Shown piece by piece: positions 6,793 to 15,031 of a stretch of DNA of 64,000 nucleotides. A program made the translations under genes and the position numbers. The stretch covers positions 3,032,165 to 3,096,164 of the forward strand of contig CAJFCJ010000005.1 of the NCBI GenBank assembly GCA_904063045.1. Direction: 5' to 3'. This DNA is from Dimorphilus gyrociliatus (Eukaryota; Animalia; Annelida). The notes below the pieces were generated by a model that was not told where the DNA came from, did not search any database, and worked only from the letters and a program-made list of their open reading frames with translations. The number at the start of each line of letters is the position of its first letter. Position 1 is the first letter of the stretch.

Positions 6793-7636
6793 ATGGAAAC
6801 ACTCGGGGCGGAAGAAAGGATTAAAACGGCTCATCAGGAATTTCGACGACGACGCTCACTAACTTTAGAAAGTCATTCGAGCCCTTTTACTGGAAGCTCA
6901 CTTGGAAAATGTTTAGAACAAAGAAGACAAAGTATGACCAGTGATGAGGATGATAATGGGAGGCTATCAACTTTGCAGACGACACTGCATAGTTCTCAGG
7001 CCGGCAATCTATCTTATTATGGAACTGATAGAAGAAGATGCTTTATTCAGGTTTGTTCAGGCTGTAGATGTCGCTACAAATTCCCATCATTTTATGGGAT
7101 GTTCTGCAGAGATTTTAGAAAAAAAATGAAAAATTAAACCATATTTTTGAGTTATAAATAAGTTTACTATATAAGGATTACTCTATGGTTATTTATGGAT
7201 ATATAGAAATACACGCATCTGCATGAAAAGCCTATAAATACCAATATACCTTGAATCTAATTATATATACAAAGTGAATTACACGTGTCCACTAAGATAT
7301 GATTTTATATTTAGAAGTATAGAGATGGTATTTAGGAGCAATTTGGAAATGGATCTTTTCTTTAATTAATAGGTTGAAAAAGTTTTTGTACGCCCTCTAG
7401 TGACGAATCGATTTTTTTCAGCACGGCTTTGTAAATTGCGCTTTGCAAGTACTGATTACGAAGAAGTATGGTATAGAGATTTGGAACGAAATTCGGTTCG
7501 TATGCGTGTATGTGCATAGTAGATATGTATACTTATAAGCATACAGTATACTCTATTCTATTATGTAATATAAATATACAATATAGCTATACATTTGTAT
7601 ACAAACAGTCTTTATGTATAAACGTTTGCGTGTCTG

Positions 7637-7687
<51 letters not shown>

Positions 7688-10280
7688 TAAATGCATTACG
7701 ATATGTATTGTTCGTTATGCTAATGTATATACATGTACATATATACAGTATATATATATATATATATATATATTTATCTGTTTATTTACAATATATATTA
7801 GCTATATAGTATAGTAATTTATTAATTATGTAATAAACAACAATCCTTATTAAATTCTTTAATCTTTTTTGTAAATAAGCGCAATTAGACAAATCGCTGA
7901 GTAATGATGATGAATTTTACGCCCCAATCGTTTTGATTCGACCATGATAATTACCTATCAGTTTATAAAAAAAGAGTCCACTATTTACAGGCAACTCTGC
8001 CGGGAAAAGCTTCGTTCGCCGTCTGTTTTTAGGAGAATGCTATACGACAATATGAATTCGAATTATGATTCTGTTGAAGCAACGTCTGAAGTTTTAGGGC
8101 TGGGAACGAATGCCGTATGGGAAATGTTCGGAGAAATGTTTTTTGACTTTTGCGAAGAATCTGGTTATGATAGGATATTAAGCGTTCTGGGTGGAACACT
8201 AAGGGATTTTCTTCAAAACTTGGACGCTCTTCACGATCATTTGGCCACTATATATCCCGGGATGAGACCGCCGTCCTTTCGCTGTAGTGAAAAACGTCCA
8301 GATGGATCAATGATATTGCATTACTATTCAGAGAGAAAAGGCCTTGAGCACGTAGTTATAGGTATGGTAAAGGCGATCGCTCAACGTCTACATAGTAAAG
8401 AAGTAACTGTCGAAATAGTATCGACGACCTGGGAATTTTGTCGAGATCATGTGCAGTTCCTAATTCGAGAAAGAGTAGCCCAAAATCCAGCTTTAGTTCG
8501 ATATGATCATTCAGTGGAGCTATTATCAGAAACACCTTTAATTAGTCCTGCGACCTTCTGTAAAGCCTTTCCTTTTCACGTGATAATGAATCGTGAATTG
8601 AATATAGTGCAAGTTGGCCAATCTTTATCTAGAGTTGTTCCGGAACTCAATCAGCCGAATTGCAGCTTCAAGGACGTTTTTCAAATAGTTCGACCACACC
8701 TGGTTGACACCACATATGAGCAGATAATTAATCATGCTGATAATACAACATTTGTTGTTAGAGTCAGGGACAAAAGAAGTCAGTCACCGAGACAATCAAT
8801 AGATGTTCCATCTTTTGCATTTTTAAGGCAACAGGCAAGATTAGGCATTCCGGACGCTGGTTGCCGAACGAGGATGCGTCTCAAGGGACAAATGGTCGAG
8901 CTTCCGGACCGCCTACTGTTCCTATCCTCACCTAACTTTGCCAACATCGACGAGTTACTGGAAAGAGGACTCTATTTAAGCGATATACCAATACACGACG
9001 CTACTAGAGATCTTATTTTATTAAGCGAACAGTTTAGAGCCGAATACGAATTAACTCAAAAACTTGAAGTACTGAATGACAAAATGCAGCAGACTTACAA
9101 GGAACTCGAAATTGAAAAGCAGCTGACCGATAAACTAGTATATTCCATTCTACCGCCTACCGTTGCTAATAGACTACGATTAGGTGAACCAGTAGAGGCT
9201 AAAAAATACTCGTAGGCATCTTATTCAATTTCTTTCACTTTGATTCCTATTAGTGATTTCTTTCAGATCTGCTTCCATACTTTTTAGCGGTATATACGAT
9301 TTTAATTCATTTTGCAATAGTAATACTCCTATAAAAGTTGTTAACCTCCTTAACGAATTATATACAAAATTCGATTCTTTGGCGGAACCTCAAATCTATG
9401 ATGTTTATAAGGTAAAGAGATATTGACTATGCAGAATAGAAGGCGTTTTAACCTATATATATCTATATATATAGATATATAGATATATATATATATATAT
9501 AAATTACCTTATAGAAAGTTAAACCCTCAAGCTAGTTTCTTTTTAATCGGTTCAGGTCGAAACTGTTGGAGATAAGTACATGCTGGCGAGCGGTTTACCG
9601 GAACGAAGCGGCAGACATGCGAAAAATATTGCGTTGGTCGCGTTAGACATGATGGATATCGTGCGCGAATTGCAAGTCGATGGTCAGAACATACGGGTTA
9701 GTGTTGAGTAATAAATAATATAAAGCTAATAATTTTTTCCATGTTTTTTACTATCCTTGGATTATTTGTTAGCCAATAATAACTGTTTAACGACATACGA
9801 TGATTTCTATATCTTCATTTTTTATATGACTAATAGTTTTTTCGTTTACAGTTGACAATTGGTATACACAGTGGAGAAGTTGTCGCCGGAGTTGTAGGTC
9901 AAAAGTTACCTAGATATGCTGTTTTTGGTAGCACTGTATGTTTAGCCAGCAGGATGGAAAGTACCGGGTTGACAGATTGCATTAACATATCGGAGACCAC
10001 TTTTGAATGTCTACAAACAGAGGAAAATAGAGACGAACAATTCGAAATCAAAAAAAGGGGTTTGGTACCGATGAAAGGTCGAAAAGAGCCTATGGCGTGT
10101 TACATTCTCTCTAGAAACCTTAGAAACCTACCCAAAGTTCAAATGATGTTGGAAAGCGGTATTCCAGTCCAATCCAGTCGACCGCCTTCGGGAACAGCAA
10201 CGTCACCATTAAGCCTAAGCGATCAGTTGACTGCAAACACGCTACGACAAGTAGCGCTCAACTTGCAGGACTATATATAA
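6793..10280 (+). CDS. GUCY1B1: Soluble guanylyl cyclase beta-1-like subunit (H-NOX, PAS/H-NOBA, coiled coil, cyclase); multi-exon
   Basis: Exons inferred at GT-AG sites: 7422-7495 ([25 protein letters not shown]), 7991-9211 ([10 protein letters not shown]; HYYSERKG), 9267-9411 (ILFSGI, as in beta-1), 9556-9696 (VETVGDKY), 9852-10280 (TIGIHSG...PRYAVFG...MKGRK). The 5' end is uncertain: either an ATG-only coding exon at 7325-7327 or the 6793-7050 exon. Confidence 0.85.
7645..7685. repeat. (AT)n microsatellite in an sGC beta intron
   Basis: About 20 AT units; a second shorter run follows near 7750. Confidence 0.9.
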
Positions 10281-10844
10281 TAGTATTATTTTGAATTTAA
10301 GTCAATTTTATATATATCTTCCATAAATACATATGATAAAATGAGCATAATATACAAGTGTAAAAAATGAGAAAAAAATAGACGACAGGATAAATGCCTC
10401 GACGCCTATCGATCGTGGTGAAATTTTACACCAGTAGAAAATCTATCAGTCGAATTAATTCGGCGTATAAATCACATGATGCGCTGACATTTCGTAGACG
10501 AGTAAAAAAAAAAGGCGGGAAAGGAAGCGCAAAAAAATAAGGAGGAGCAGTTAACAGCTACCTAGCGACTGCGGGACGCCTGCTAGACGGCTGATGGACG
10601 GAACTAGGACGTTCTAAAAGGTTTAACAAGAGAGGGAAAAAGAGTGTGCGAAAAAAGGTCAAGGGGAAAAGCAGAGACCTCTATAATTCAGTTGTTTAGC
10701 GCTAATTGAAAATTAAAAAAAAAACAAATTTAATCGATATTTAATGTATATAAAGAGGAAATAAAGTAATGATGGGAGAGTGAAGTTACTGAGTAAGCAT
10801 ATGAGTGAATGAGTAAGAGAGGGATACATAGATACATTTAACTA

Positions 10845-10950
10845 CATACACACACACACACGCACACTCACACTCACATACGTGAGAGTTAGTGAGCGAG
10901 AGAGAGAGAGAGCGAGAGAGAGAGAAAGAGAGCGAGAGAGAGAGAGAGAG
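10845..10950. repeat. Compound (CA)n/(GA)n microsatellite upstream of the second sGC gene
   Basis: Imperfect CA run 10845-10879 followed by an imperfect GA run ~10894-10950. Confidence 0.85.
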
Positions 10951-10995
10951 CAAAAAAAAAGACAAGCTGCAGGTGGCTTAAAATTTGCCGTACAG

Positions 10996-11026
10996 CCAAT
11001 CCTCGAATTTATCCTGATCACGTGAC
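10996..11026. promoter_or_regulatory. Putative proximal promoter of the second sGC gene: CCAAT box and palindromic E-box
   Basis: CCAAT at 10996-11000 and TCACGTGAC at 11018-11026, 70-100 nt upstream of the ATG at 11097 and just downstream of a long GA repeat. Confidence 0.4.
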
Positions 11027-11096
11027 CCATTGCGGTGCCGACGCCCGGCAGAAGGCACGTCGAAAACGGAACATGCGGAACGGATAGTTGGAAAAG

Positions 11097-14000
11097 ATGG
11101 TTAGCAGACTTAAATTTATTTCTTTTTTTTTAGTCCATACTTATATCTTCCATCATTCATCTTCTTCATTTAACTCGTAGGCATCTCATAGCATTTTCTT
11201 ATCTCTTTTTATATTTCATTTATCGCTCTCCTCTTATAAAATATCTATAGATGGTGGCCAATCGACCGCAGCGGCTCGTAATTTCATATCGATTCTGTTG
11301 CGGTCTGAATATATTGGATACATATTCTTATTCTTTCCTTCTTTTTTTATGCAGTACGGCTTTATTCTGGCCGCACTCTCTAACCACGTTCGGAACAAGT
11401 ATGGGGAGGAAACGTGGAAATCAATAGCGTAAGTAGCAAAATATGTGTAAATAATATTATATAACAAGATACACACATACAGTTTATATATTATATATAT
11501 ATATATATTTTAAATATTTATACTTATATACATAAATATGTTAAGTAACGCTTATAATGATTCCAAAAGCGTTATTAATCAGCTGCATTAACGTGGAATT
11601 ATGTAAATAAGCAAATAGATTTATTTATATTTTAATAGCATTAACAAAATGATTTATAAAATTTTATTCAAGTGTTTCATTGTAAATAAATGGGTAAATA
11701 CTCTGTTGACAGATGCGAGTGCGGCCTGGAAGAGGATGTCGTCATTTCGCATCAAAAGATGTACGATGATCAACTTGTGCAAAAGGTCTTCACTTCGACG
11801 GCGCATAAACTCGGTACGTCCTTTTCTAGTTCAGAAAATAAGCGAAAGAAAACATACATATACACACACACACACATACATACACAAAAAACAACTAATG
11901 ACTAAATTAAGGGTTAATTACGGGTTGAATAACCTTGTATATATGTATCATTAACCTTAGGGTCACGAACGAACGATTTCTTGGAGAAATTTGGTGGCAA
12001 CTTTTATGATTATTGCGTAGACGGAGGATATGAAAGGATCATGCGTGTTCTTGGTAATAATTTAGCGGATTTTCTCTGCAATTTGGATGCCCTTCACGAT
12101 CATTTGGCAAGCGTATACACGCAAATGAACGCCCCATCATTCCGTTGTTGCAGTAAAGAGGACGGAAGTTTATACCTTTACTGTTCGAGCGATAGGCAAT
12201 GGATGTATCCGATGGTAAAAGGTCTTTTAGTCCGCTTAGCTGATCAATTATTCGATACAAACGTTCATGTTGACCTCGTTGAAACGGATGCGGAAGACGA
12301 TCAAGTTGTATTCAGTGTTAGAGAAAGGACTAGAGAAAGTAGGCGGCGTAGCTGCTCACTTATAACAATAACAACAAAACGCCTACGGACGTCGAACCTT
12401 CCCGAAGAATCTTGCGTTCCAATCGATGTCTTTTGCCGACTCTTCCCGTTCCATTTTGTGCTGAACCGCAAATTGGAAATTGTTCAAGCCGGCGTCGCTT
12501 TATTGCGTATTTTAAACTGCAGAAAATCATTACGTCTACAAGATGTATTTCAAATCGTTAGGCCTATTGGAAAACCAACTTTTCCTTCCCTATTGGCCAA
12601 CCTGCACCACGTTTTCGTCTTAAAGGGTAAGCGAACAGATATACGCCTAAAGGGTCAGGTTATCTACGCAAGCGAATCGGATAGCCTTCTATTCCTTTGC
12701 TCCCCTCGCGTCGATAATCTTGACGATTTGAAGGCGAGCGGTCTCTTCCTATCCGATATTCCTCCGCACGATGCGACCCGTGACCTTATACTAATCACGC
12801 AGGCTAGACGAGCTGAGAGAGAGCTCGTAGAGAAATTAGAAGAAGCTTCTGCCAATTTAAAACGATTACAAAGAAAATTAGAAGAGGAGAAGCGTCAAAC
12901 GGACCAACTACTAATTAGCTTGTTACCGTCTAATGTTGCTTCCAAACTGCGATTGAATCAGACGGTTGAGGCCGAAAAGTATAATCTAGTAACTATTTTA
13001 TTCTCGGATATAGTTGGATTTACTGCAATGTGTAGTAACGAAAAGGTCGTGCCTATGGACATAATCCGGGTACTTAACAAACTATACACGAAATTTGATA
13101 TGATGAGCACGGCCCATAATGTTTACAAAGTCGAAACCATCGGAGACGCTTATGTTGTCGTTGCTGGTCTACCGCACTATACTCAAGTAATAATCTCTTA
13201 CGTTTTTTCCACTTCAAGTATGACTTTCGTTTCTCTTATAAATTTTCTTTATATTTAGACTCACGCCGACAGAGTCGTGAACATGGCATTGAGCATGCAA
13301 CAGATTACTCAATCCATAACGAGACCCGCATCAGATTCCCCGATACAGGTATAAATCCCTTTACAACCCGTATGTTTTTGACGGCGAGAAGAGGATGGAA
13401 GGTCATTAACCTCCCACGTCTAGCCTTTTATAATAATTAATATGACGCTCAAAGTAAATTTTGATCAACTATCAACAGATTCGAATAGGTATACACAGCG
13501 GCGATTGCCTAGCAGGTATTGTTGGCCAAAAAATGCCAAGATATTGTCTCTTTGGTCATAGTGTAAGCATTGCTTCTCAAATGGAAGGAGCTAGCCTACC
13601 CGGATGCATTAACATCAGTAAAATAGCGAAGAGGTAGGCCTATCTCGCTTCAATTTTTCTTCCTTAACCTATTAATAGTATTTTTTTTATCAATCTTGCT
13701 GCTGCTTCTTCTATGGATATTTATTTCACCCTGCGATCTATCTTCTCATTCTCTTCCATCTTCCAAATATGCGTCGTTCTCTTTTCCTCCCATTTCTCAT
13801 TCATCAAAATCAGCTACCTTACCTGTCCCAACTCGTACATTTTCGAGAAAAATTGGCAGGCCGATGACTGTTATTTCGTCTACCAAAAGAGCGGGGTGAA
13901 CTTTGTTACTTCCTATCTTGCTGATTTATCGATTCCGGAGGCACCAAGGAGCCATTTTAAAACGCCTAGTCCGTCGCCCACGGCTTCCCCCGATTCTACA

Positions 14001-15031
14001 CCTGTTCGAACAATTGATTATAATACGGAGAACAGAACAAAATCAAAAATTTCATCACCATTGACAGTAAGTTTACCTTTCGTATTAGAAAGAAACAACC
14101 AATAAACAAGCAAACAATTAATTGTTGTAAGTTTTTCCATTTCTTGTTATTATAATAGTAAAGAAAACATATAGACAGTGAAAGGAAAAGGCGCGATAAA
14201 TTATGTACTTGATTTACCCTACACCGTAAAAATTAGTTTAATTTCTAGGGCGATTAATTTGTAACTGTAGGGGTTTCAGTAACTCTTTTTAATGTTTTCC
14301 TTTCTGAAAAACAATTAGATATGCAACTAATATTGTAATGAGTATTAAGGCAGTAAGGCTGTCAAGAGTCATCAAACAATGAATGAAGACGGATTATTTG
14401 CTGAAAGCAAGTGGTGTTTGAGGAGAGATAACGCAACTCGACTTTTTTTTTATTTCCTCCCAATAGTAATTTATATATATGTATATACATATATATTATA
14501 TTCTTTGTTCTCCTTTTCTCTTTATAGATGCCTATCATACATATTTCTGACGTTGGAGAAGTTGAAGAAGATACAAGAAAGAGAAAGGAAATTGAAGAAA
14601 GAGAAAAGTTAGGGTGGGATCGGTACGATAATAGTGAATTAGATAAAAGAGATGGTATCTTAGAACCTTCACCAACACCATCTAATGGATCTTCTACACC
14701 AACGTCATCGTTTGCTAGTAGGAGAATGAGCGCTGTTGAAAAACGATCTGCTGAACGCTGTCCTGCTTTAGCAGCCCACGAATTATCTGGTAGAACTGAT
14801 AGTAGGAGACCTTCATCATTATGGACTGTAAACCGGAAATCACGTTCATCATCTTTATTCGTTCAAACGGAATCTCACCCAGATAAGCGTCGAACTAGGA
14901 GTAAATCGACCGGATGTGCCGATGTAAGAATTGCTCAACTAGACTTAAAAAAAATTCGCGAAAATGGCCGCCTAGTTTTCTATTTTTACAAGGACAAGAA
15001 TTATAAAGACAGATCGAACGAATCAAATTGA
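11097..15031 (+). CDS. Second soluble guanylyl cyclase subunit: full H-NOX domain with an alpha-type catalytic domain and a long Ser/Arg-rich C-terminal tail
   Basis: Exons inferred: ATG 11097-11099, 11355-11428 ([24 protein letters not shown]), 11713-11813, 11961-13186 ([10 protein letters not shown]; FSDIVGF; VETIGDAY), 13259-13348, 13479-13633 (IRIGIHSG...[19 protein letters not shown]), 13814-14066, 14528-15031. All junctions keep the frame. The last two exons are less certain. Confidence 0.85.

What the first reader, a model, noticed from the sequence alone, without database searches (positions are those of the whole stretch)
6793..15031. Tandem soluble guanylyl cyclase pair that looks like a self-contained heterodimer operon-like unit
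Two adjacent same-strand sGC genes have complementary active-site halves. Gene 1 is beta-type: FSGI lacks the first metal Asp, and it keeps the guanine-recognition Glu (VET), the transition-state Arg (ASR) and the MKG lysine. Gene 2 is alpha-type: it has both metal Asps (FSDI, IGDA) and the RIGIH Arg, but lacks the Asn/Arg pair (HSVSIASQM) and the MKG motif. Neither should work as a homodimer, so they are predicted partners (inference). This parallels the vertebrate GUCY1A1/GUCY1B1 tandem, but gene 2 looks like a beta-derived H-NOX protein, which could mean an independently evolved alpha-like partner.
Basis: partly seen in the sequence, partly recalled or inferred. Interest (0 to 1): 0.7.

Follow-up and report, generated by a model that had tools for sequence, protein, structure and literature searches.

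The report
Unusual tandem pair of gas-sensor cyclase genes
Two neighbouring genes in the tiny marine worm Dimorphilus gyrociliatus each encode one complementary half of a cGMP-making gas-sensor enzyme, and both belong to old but apparently unnamed branches of that enzyme family rather than to the textbook alpha and beta subunits.

Summary
Window 6793-15031 (+) of Dimorphilus gyrociliatus carries two intact soluble guanylyl cyclase (sGC) genes: gene 1 has 6 exons (755 aa) and gene 2 has 7 exons (802 aa), with about 1.07 kb between them.

Gene 1 has a beta-type half-site (Gly at the first metal Asp; Glu, Arg and Lys kept). Gene 2 has an alpha-type half-site (both Asp and the Arg; no Asn, Arg or Lys) on a beta-like H-NOX that keeps the heme histidine.

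Gene 2 is under strong purifying selection (dN/dS 0.06). It is not a canonical alpha and not a local invention. It sits in a well-supported clade with placozoan, cnidarian, annelid, nemertean, amphioxus and chelicerate proteins, all combining heme-binding residues with an alpha-type catalytic half.

Gene 1 belongs to a beta-1 side branch marked by a conserved N-terminal extension.

That the two proteins pair with each other is plausible but unproven.

The parts
6793..7050 (+). Gene 1 exon 1: start codon plus an 86-aa N-terminal extension that precedes the H-NOX domain
   Evidence: The ORF runs from an ATG to a phase-0 donor, CAG|GTTTGT. The extension aligns with the N-terminal extension of Tubulanus P0369, sharing a motif just before the H-NOX start. 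It is absent from the annotated model P0121.
7422..7495 (+). Gene 1 exon 2: start of the H-NOX domain (HGFVN..., with no Met-Tyr)
   Evidence: tblastn hits of sGC N-termini fall here. The acceptor lies immediately upstream and there is no in-frame ATG.
7991..9211 (+). Gene 1 exon 3: rest of H-NOX, the PAS/HNOBA domain and the coiled coil
   Evidence: Pfam HNOB and HNOBA. 100% identical to DgyrCDS3804. Splice phases are consistent.
9267..9411 (+). Gene 1 exon 4: first part of the cyclase domain (FSGI; Gly replaces metal Asp 1)
   Evidence: Pfam Guanylate_cyc; model reproduces P0121; residue table.
9556..9696 (+). Gene 1 exon 5: middle of the cyclase domain (VETVGD)
9852..10280 (+). Gene 1 exon 6: end of the cyclase domain (T520, A541, C548, R552, K593) and the C-terminal tail, to the stop codon
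   Evidence: The tail motif is shared with Tubulanus P0369.
10281..11348 (.). Intergenic spacer of 1068 bp, containing ATTAAA at 10712, AATAAA at 10760 and a CA/GA microsatellite at about 10780-11030
11349..11428 (+). Gene 2 exon 1: ATG and the start of H-NOX (MQYGF...)
   Evidence: tblastn hit of Nematostella P0007 residues 1-25; donor GC|GTAAGT.
11713..11813 (+). Gene 2 exon 2: H-NOX
   Evidence: Splice phases. 86% nucleotide identity with no gaps to the sibling contig L007, against about 70% with indels in the flanking introns.
11961..13186 (+). Gene 2 exon 3: H-NOX (His105; CxSxR), PAS/HNOBA, coiled coil, and the first part of the cyclase domain (FSDIV, IGDAY)
   Evidence: Pfam; closest homologues; 92.7% identity with no gaps to L007; residue table.
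13259..13348 (+). Gene 2 exon 4: middle of the cyclase domain
13479..13633 (+). Gene 2 exon 5: cyclase domain (IRIGIH Arg; C541; S548 and Q552 in place of Asn and Arg)
   Evidence: Pfam; residue table; motif identical in the sibling taxon.
13814..14066 (+). Gene 2 exon 6: end of the cyclase domain (no MKG lysine) and a Ser/Pro-rich tail
   Evidence: Collinear with the Capitella P0002 tail. Conservation ends at the conserved donor |GTAAGT.
14528..15031 (+). Gene 2 exon 7: 167-codon C-terminal extension, to the stop codon
   Evidence: Phase-0 junction with a conserved acceptor. No gaps to L007 and dN/dS 0.073. Its first residues match Tubulanus P0202 at the collinear position, though only marginally (E 0.049). 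No Pfam domain.

Best explanation
These are two separately transcribed, intact subunit genes of heme-based soluble guanylyl cyclase, and each carries only half of a class III cyclase active site.

Gene 1 is a beta-type subunit. It comes from a beta-1 side branch (here called B1x) that has a conserved N-terminal extension. It contributes the guanine Glu, the transition-state Arg and the phosphate Lys.

Gene 2 is an alpha-type subunit from an ancient, unnamed clade (here called G2). It contributes both metal Asp residues and the triphosphate Arg. Unlike canonical alpha subunits, it keeps a beta-like H-NOX with the proximal His.

The most likely mechanism is an obligate heterodimer with one composite catalytic site and, unusually, two potentially heme-binding sensor domains. 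It would respond to NO or CO rather than O2, because neither subunit has a Tyr at the position corresponding to beta-1 Ile145 (the site equated with the O2-stabilising distal-pocket Tyr).

Shown here: the gene structures, the residue pattern, the clade membership and purifying selection on gene 2. Inferred: that the two products dimerise with each other, their heme content, their ligand and their activity. Activity may be low, because gene 1 lacks Asn548.
For: - Domain architecture is present in both genes.
- GT-AG models are consistent in phase, and the gene 1 model reproduces DgyrCDS3804.
- The half-site residues are complementary.
- Gene 2 is constrained: dN/dS 0.063 at dS 0.42 against a sibling-taxon contig, with the unusual catalytic motif unchanged and introns diverged with indels.
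- The G2 clade has 100/99 support, the alpha clade 100/100, and gene 1 plus Tubulanus P0369 100/100 inside the beta-1 clade.
- The B1x subclade is supported at 100.
- The B1x N-terminal extension is conserved across two phyla.
- A B1x gene and a G2 gene also lie on one contig, same strand and same order, 80 kb apart, in another unidentified organism.
- C78 and C214 are kept, and position 145 is Val in gene 1 and Met in gene 2.
Against: - There is no expression, co-expression or interaction data.
- The rest of the genome could not be searched, so other sGC subunits (canonical alpha, canonical beta-1, or complete atypical subunits) may exist and be the real partners.
- In Tubulanus the B1x and G2 genes are about 16 Mb apart.
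- No sGC gene lies within 10 kb of the G2 gene in Capitella, Nematostella, Tubulanus or amphioxus, so adjacency is not a conserved feature of the pair.
- Gene 1 lacks Asn548 and Cys541, so even the composite site is incomplete.
Confidence: 0.5

Rival explanations
1. The two genes are neighbours by descent from an ancestral sGC gene cluster, but they do not partner each other. Each product pairs with a different subunit encoded elsewhere. For example, gene 2 might pair with a complete atypical subunit or a canonical beta-1, and gene 1 with a canonical alpha.
For: - sGC paralogues are linked in other animals without being specific partners. Tubulanus has alpha, beta-1, G2 and B1x genes all on one chromosome.
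- A mite gene model fuses two sGC units.
- G2 genes occur in cnidarians, amphioxus and ticks, and none of the sequences sampled from those groups fell in the B1x subclade, so G2 must be able to use another beta-type partner there.
- Another annelid (Owenia) has both a canonical alpha and a canonical beta-1.
Against: - No second Dimorphilus sGC protein appeared among the top 120 hits of either exon search. This is weak evidence because of the list cut-off and the length filter.
- B1x and G2 are also linked in the same order on ENA contig_349.
Confidence: 0.3
2. The pair does dimerise, but the complex is a weak or dead cyclase, or has altered nucleotide specificity. Gene 1 has lost Asn548 and Cys541, and gene 2 cannot supply them. 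The complex would then act mainly as a heme or gas sensor, as a scaffold, or as a dominant-negative regulator.
For: - N548C and C541A are found only in gene 1 among the beta-1-clade sequences that cover this region.
- From general knowledge of class III cyclases (not tested here), the equivalent Asn positions the ribose, and mutating it lowers kcat strongly.
Against: - The catalytic domain of gene 2 is almost invariant between the two sibling taxa, which suggests the catalytic module is still in use.
- Glu473, Arg552, Lys593, both Asp residues and the Arg are all present in the composite site.
- From my own knowledge, some active guanylyl cyclases lack the Cys.
Confidence: 0.15
3. Operon-like unit: both genes are transcribed as one polycistronic or read-through RNA from the gene 1 promoter.
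For: Same strand and only 1.07 kb apart.
Against: - The genome paper finds no spliced leaders and a canonical promoter landscape, and excludes operons in this species (PMC7854359).
- Poly(A) signals lie at 10712 and 10760, after the gene 1 stop.
- Gene density is 209 genes per Mb, so a spacing of about 1 kb is ordinary.
Confidence: 0.04
4. Gene 2 is a recent, lineage-specific derivative of a beta-1 duplicate that converged on alpha-like catalytic residues.
For: The H-NOX and PAS domains of gene 2 are closer to beta-1 (38-44% identity) than to alpha (22-38%).
Against: Gene 2 groups at 100/99 support with orthologues from Placozoa, Cnidaria, Nemertea, amphioxus and arthropods, which share the same alpha-type residues with few exceptions. 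Its nearest relatives are Capitella and Tubulanus proteins (99/95).
Confidence: 0.01

Closest known systems
Canonical NO-sensitive sGC alpha1/beta1 heterodimer (GUCY1A1/GUCY1B1; Drosophila Gyc-alpha-99B/Gyc-beta-100B; PDB 6JT0, 6PAS)
   Same: - Both have the four-domain architecture.
- Both have one composite active site built from an alpha-type half (two Asp plus Arg) and a beta-type half (Glu, Arg, Lys).
- The beta-type subunit has His105 and YxSxR.
   Different: - Gene 2 lies outside the alpha clade and keeps the heme ligands that canonical alphas have lost.
- Gene 1 lies outside the core bilaterian beta-1 clade, has an 86-aa N-terminal extension, and lacks Asn548 and Cys541.
Atypical sGCs: Gyc-88E with Gyc-89Da/Db, MsGC-beta3, mammalian beta-2, C. 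elegans GCY-35/GCY-36
   Same: - These are beta-like, heme-binding subunits.
- Some are thought to act as alpha/beta-like heterodimers made of two heme-domain proteins (PMC1435932).
   Different: - Nearly all sampled atypical sequences keep the complete catalytic set. The nematode gcy-35-type and Gordionus sequences have Lys at 552, and one Rhodnius 88E-like protein lacks both Asn and Arg.
- They branch outside the alpha + G2 + beta-1 clade (100/99).
- The 88E-like crab sequence sampled has Tyr at position 145, whereas both window genes do not.
- No sequence named Gyc-89D could be included.
The 'G2' clade itself: database proteins labelled beta-1-like or hypothetical (Capitella CAPTEDRAFT_127209, a Nematostella 'predicted protein', Branchiostoma floridae beta-1-like of 674 aa, Ixodes 855- and 1057-aa proteins, Placozoa sp. 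H4 soluble GCY)
   Same: - 50-56% identity to gene 2 over the large exon.
- They form the same clade.
- They share the residue pattern: His105, Tyr135, Ser137, Arg139, both Asp, Arg520 and Cys541, with non-Asn at 548 (usually Thr), usually Lys at 552 and no Lys at 593.
- Several have long C-terminal tails.
   Different: - Gene 2 has Cys at 135, Ser at 548 and Gln at 552.
- I found no paper that names or characterises this clade.
Tandem alpha1-beta1 gene pair of vertebrates (my own knowledge) and of the nemertean Tubulanus polymorphus
   Same: Two sGC subunit genes lie head to tail on one strand, about 1 kb apart (Tubulanus).
   Different: - There the order is alpha then beta-1, and both are canonical paralogues.
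- Here the order is beta-type then alpha-type, and the genes are B1x and G2.
- In Tubulanus the B1x and G2 genes are dispersed on the same chromosome.

Membership tests
Soluble guanylyl cyclase (H-NOX cyclase) family | H-NOX (HNOB), HNOBA/PAS, coiled coil and class III cyclase domain, in that order | tested here: met
   Pfam hits on the exon translations of both genes. Full-length alignment to human and Manduca sGC chains via the Capitella orthologue.
Canonical alpha subunit (GUCY1A / Gyc-alpha-99B) | Placement inside the alpha clade | tested here: not met
   The alpha clade has 100/100 support without gene 2. Gene 2 is in a separate clade supported at 100/99.
Canonical alpha subunit (GUCY1A / Gyc-alpha-99B) | Alpha-type catalytic half: both metal Asp and Arg520 present; Asn548, Arg552 and Lys593 absent | tested here: met
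   Gene 2 has D, D, R, then S548, Q552 and a gap at 593.
Canonical alpha subunit (GUCY1A / Gyc-alpha-99B) | Degenerate H-NOX that has lost the His105 and YxSxR heme ligands | tested here: not met
   Gene 2 keeps His105, Ser137 and Arg139; only Tyr135 is changed, to Cys. Its H-NOX is 38% identical to beta-1 against 22% to alpha.
Canonical beta-1 subunit (GUCY1B1 / Gyc-beta-100B) | Placement in the core beta-1 clade | tested here: not met
   Gene 1 is inside the wider beta-1 clade (100/100). However, it falls in a separate subclade with Tubulanus P0369 and P0122-P0128 (support 100), outside the core bilaterian beta-1 clade (support 100), which contains the canonical Tubulanus and Owenia beta-1 proteins.
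Canonical beta-1 subunit (GUCY1B1 / Gyc-beta-100B) | Heme ligands His105, Tyr135, Ser137 and Arg139 | tested here: met
   All four are present in gene 1.
Canonical beta-1 subunit (GUCY1B1 / Gyc-beta-100B) | Beta-type catalytic half: Gly at 426 and Thr at 520; Glu473, Cys541, Asn548, Arg552 and Lys593 present | tested here: not met
   G426, T520, E473, R552 and K593 are present, but position 541 is Ala and position 548 is Cys.
Atypical homodimer-capable sGC (Gyc-88E / beta-2 / GCY type) | Complete catalytic residue set in one chain, and placement in the atypical groups | tested here: not met
   Both genes lack part of the set, and both lie in the alpha + G2 + beta-1 clade (100/99).
'G2' clade (defined here) | Monophyly with Capitella 127209, Nematostella P0007 and the others, plus heme ligands combined with an alpha-type catalytic half | tested here: met
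   The clade is recovered with the whole protein, with the cyclase domain alone (support 95) and with the N-terminal part alone (support 99).
Eukaryotic operon | Polycistronic transcript resolved by trans-splicing | not testable with these tools
The literature excludes operons in this species. Poly(A) signals lie between the genes.
Obligate heterodimer of gene 1 and gene 2 products | Physical association, with activity only on co-expression | not testable with these tools
   Only the complementarity and the linkage are available.

The most novel reading that the evidence does not exclude
The G2 clade is a fourth ancient sGC subunit type: an alpha-type catalytic partner that still binds heme.

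Canonical alpha was found only in bilaterians in the profile-free search. G2 occurs in placozoans and cnidarians, and it groups with alpha in the whole-protein tree (88/55) and in the cyclase-domain tree (SH-aLRT 74). G2 could therefore represent the ancestral state of the alpha lineage. On that reading, the first heterodimeric sGCs carried a heme on both subunits.

The Dimorphilus B1x/G2 pair would then be a living two-heme heterodimeric gas sensor, distinct from the textbook one-heme enzyme.
Probability: 0.3. Interest if true: 0.75.

Novelty: new variant of a known kind. Interest (0 to 1): 0.55.

Why it matters
Soluble guanylyl cyclase is the main NO receptor of animals and a drug target. 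Its asymmetry, one heme-binding beta subunit and one heme-less alpha subunit, is usually treated as a given.

A conserved, widely distributed subunit type that has the alpha catalytic half but a beta-like heme pocket gives a direct handle on three questions:
- How the asymmetry arose.
- Whether two-heme heterodimers exist.
- What cnidarians and placozoans use as the alpha partner.

Dimorphilus offers a compact gene pair, small enough to clone, in which to test this.

For annotation, the work shows that the public model of gene 1 is truncated at its N-terminus. No named Dimorphilus protein matched gene 2 in the search, possibly only because of that tool's length filter.

Tried and rejected
**Read mapping.** That was the only call allowed, so splicing, expression and read-through are untested.

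**A possible extra H-NOX exon in gene 1.** The stretch at 7879-7917 resembles beta-1 residues 29-41. I rejected it as an exon because no in-phase GT-AG sites exist. The phase-correct acceptor at 7991 gives an equally good alignment.

**Is G2 sister to alpha or to beta-1?** The AU test cannot tell (p 0.49, log-likelihood difference 0.02). Domain trees lean opposite ways and only weakly: the cyclase domain puts alpha with G2 at 74, and the N-terminal part puts G2 with beta-1 at 65.

**Conserved tight tandem.** This was not found in Capitella, Nematostella, Tubulanus or amphioxus within 10 kb of the G2 gene. Look-ups for the coral genes failed.

**Other sGC notes in this genome.** The scan's notes list none other than one on this window.

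**Conserved intron 4 of gene 2.** No Rfam match and no unusual fold.

**Left out by rule.** Database searches with the joined spliced proteins were not run. Searches were made exon by exon, by reference, and joined models were used only inside local scripts for alignment and trees.


Full report
**Source and gene structure**

The large exon of gene 1 is 100% identical to DgyrCDS3804 of Dimorphilus gyrociliatus (P0121). The window is therefore from this miniature annelid.

Pfam finds HNOB, HNOBA and Guanylate_cyc on the exon translations of both genes. Using tblastn guides and inspection of splice sites, I built GT-AG models.
- Gene 1: 6793-7050, 7422-7495, 7991-9211, 9267-9411, 9556-9696 and 9852-10280. 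This gives 755 aa and contains P0121 exactly.
- Gene 2: 11349-11428, 11713-11813, 11961-13186, 13259-13348, 13479-13633, 13814-14066 and 14528-15031. This gives 802 aa.

The public model of gene 1 starts inside exon 3, so it lacks the start of the H-NOX domain.

Database searches were made exon by exon, by reference. Joined models were used only in local scripts.

**Evidence that the gene models are real**

A Logan contig from a sibling taxon (L007, about 85% nucleotide identity) covers gene 2 from intron 1 onwards.
- Exons 2-5 and exon 7 align without gaps at 86-93% identity. The only gaps in exon 6 (85%) lie after the 14066 donor adopted in the final model. Introns 1, 2, 3 and 5 are 51-70% identical with indels.
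- dN/dS is 0.063 for exons 2-6 (dS 0.42) and 0.073 for the last exon.
- The unusual catalytic motif is unchanged in the sibling taxon.
- Conservation stops exactly at the conserved donor after 14066 and resumes at the conserved acceptor before 14528.
- The first residues of the last exon match Tubulanus P0202 at the collinear position, marginally (E 0.049).

For gene 1, the 86-aa first exon aligns with the N-terminal extension of Tubulanus P0369. The two share a motif that runs straight into an H-NOX lacking the usual Met-Tyr start.

There is therefore no RNA evidence.

**Active-site and heme residues**

Residues are numbered on vertebrate beta-1, which has 619 aa and the same numbering as human.

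| Group | Heme ligands (105, 135, 137, 139) | Catalytic positions |
|---|---|---|
| Atypical / beta-2 / 88E-like | present | full set, apart from Lys552 in the nematode and Gordionus sequences and one Rhodnius protein lacking Asn and Arg |
| Canonical beta-1 | present | G426, T520, plus E473, C541, N548, R552, K593 |
| Canonical alpha | lost | both Asp, R520, C541; T548, K552, no K593 |
| Gene 1 | H, Y, S, R | G426, E473, D477, T520, A541, C548, R552, K593 |
| Gene 2 | H, C, S, R | D426, E473, D477, R520, C541, S548, Q552, none at 593 |

Gene 1, however, has also lost Asn548 and Cys541. No other beta-1-clade sequence covering that region shares this, including its nearest full-length relative. 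The composite site is therefore still short of the ribose-orienting Asn.

Both genes keep Cys78 and Cys214. Position 145 is Val in gene 1 and Met in gene 2, whereas a crab 88E-like protein has Tyr there. This points to an NO/CO-type pocket rather than an O2-type pocket, by inference only.

**Phylogeny**

Gene 2's best hits are not named beta-1 orthologues but a distinct set at 50-56% identity: Capitella CAPTEDRAFT_127209, a Nematostella 'predicted protein', Paralvinella, and many unnamed marine sequences. True beta-1 proteins reach only 41-46%.

On the cyclase domain alone, the Capitella orthologue's neighbours are cnidarian, amphioxus, tick, centipede and placozoan proteins, followed by beta-2-like and 88E/gcy-35-like proteins.

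A search with a fish alpha-1 supplied canonical alphas from vertebrates, amphioxus, Ciona, sea urchin, arthropods, molluscs, nemerteans and the annelid Owenia. None of those that I could name came from a non-bilaterian.

A careful maximum-likelihood tree of 71 sequences, rooted on choanoflagellate sGCs, gave the following:
- The atypical groups branch at the base.
- A clade supported at 100/99 contains alpha (100/100), a 'G2' clade (100/99) and sponge sequences plus beta-1 (97/93).
- The G2 clade holds gene 2 with Capitella and Tubulanus (99/95), plus amphioxus, chelicerates, a centipede, cnidarians and a placozoan.

Alpha + G2 is favoured only weakly (88/55). The AU test cannot reject G2 with beta-1 instead (p 0.49). 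The cyclase-domain tree puts alpha, G2 and an Oscarella sequence with an alpha-type half together (support 74 and 85). The N-terminal tree leans weakly towards G2 with beta-1 (65).

Almost every G2 member with data keeps His105, Tyr135, Ser137 and Arg139 together with an alpha-type catalytic half. Gene 2 is thus neither a canonical alpha nor a recent beta derivative. It is a member of an old clade that combines both characters.

Gene 1 groups at 100/100 with Tubulanus P0369 inside the beta-1 clade. Together with P0122-P0128 it forms a subclade ('B1x', support 100). In a separate quick tree with the simpler LG+G4 model, that subclade is sister to the core bilaterian beta-1 clade, which contains the canonical Tubulanus and Owenia beta-1 proteins.

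**Genomic context elsewhere**

- In Tubulanus, a canonical alpha lies immediately upstream of canonical beta-1 on the same strand. To my knowledge this matches the vertebrate alpha1-beta1 tandem.
- Also in Tubulanus, the G2 gene (6.4 Mb) and the B1x gene (22.3 Mb) are elsewhere on the same chromosome.
- On ENA contig_349, from an unidentified organism, a B1x gene and a G2 gene lie 80 kb apart on the same strand, in the same order as here.
- No second sGC gene lies within 10 kb of the G2 gene in Capitella, Nematostella, Tubulanus or amphioxus.
- A mite protein model (P0200) holds two HNOBA and two cyclase domains. This suggests two adjacent sGC genes fused by the annotation.

The family thus tends to stay linked, but the tight B1x-then-G2 tandem is particular to this compact genome.

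**The 'operon-like' claim**

The genome paper reports no spliced leaders and a canonical promoter landscape, and it excludes operons and trans-splicing. Gene density is 209 genes per Mb (PMC7854359). ATTAAA and AATAAA signals lie 430-480 nt after the gene 1 stop, about 590 nt before the gene 2 ATG. A 1.07-kb spacer is ordinary here.

**Literature**

Fitzpatrick et al. 2006 place the atypical O2-type sGCs at the base. They propose that alpha/beta heterodimers arose later from homodimers (PMC1435932), and my rooted tree agrees.

Papers on placozoan and ctenophore NO signalling, and a 2026 preprint, sort sGCs only into alpha-like and beta-like groups. I found no description of a heme-competent alpha-type clade. 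The held library is incomplete, so prior description cannot be excluded.

**Verdict**

The partner inference is reasonable but untested, and is weakened by gene 1's own missing Asn and by the unknown remainder of the subunit repertoire.

The 'independent origin' and 'operon' readings are not supported. The more interesting result is that both genes represent under-described sGC subunit types. Gene 2's clade suggests that alpha-type subunits with a working heme pocket are ancient and widespread.

Noticed in passing
window 7879-7917 (+), inside gene 1 intron 2: A 13-codon open stretch resembles beta-1 residues about 29-41 (the AQLD... segment of H-NOX). It has no in-phase GT-AG splice sites. It may be a relic of an older exon or a chance match.
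   Followed up: partly
window 13349-13478 (gene 2 intron 4): This 130-nt intron is 89% identical to the sibling-taxon contig with only 3 gap columns, whereas the other introns are 51-70% identical with many indels. There is no Rfam match and no unusual predicted fold (z -0.39). The reason for the conservation is unexplained.
   Followed up: partly
window 6793-8036 versus public protein P0121 (DgyrCDS3804): The public gene 1 model starts at a Met inside exon 3. It therefore omits about 125 residues: the conserved N-terminal extension and the first part of H-NOX. No named Dimorphilus protein matched gene 2 in the search, possibly only because of the tool's length filter.
   Followed up: partly
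L005:1-13128 (Tubulanus polymorphus OZ123230.1, about 3.89 Mb): A canonical alpha-type sGC gene lies directly upstream of canonical beta-1 on the same strand, about 1.3 kb apart. To my knowledge this is the same arrangement as the vertebrate alpha1-beta1 tandem, which suggests the tandem is ancestral to bilaterians.
   Followed up: partly
protein P0200 (Leptotrombidium deliense, 1028 aa); also UniProt T1ITQ8/T1ITQ9 of Strigamia: The mite model contains two HNOBA and two cyclase domains, so it looks like two adjacent sGC genes fused by the annotation. In the centipede, the alpha and G2 proteins have consecutive accession numbers. Both hint at G2-alpha adjacency in arthropods.
   Followed up: no
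window 10780-11030: A CA/TG and GA/TC microsatellite block lies in the spacer between the two genes.
   Followed up: no
   Followed up: no
proteins P0399 (Oscarella pearsei) and P0410 (Microstomoeca roanoka): A sponge sGC and a choanoflagellate sGC both keep the heme ligands but lack the Asn/Arg pair (S/N and T/D at positions 548/552). Half-site subunits may therefore predate or recur outside the alpha and G2 clades.
   Followed up: no
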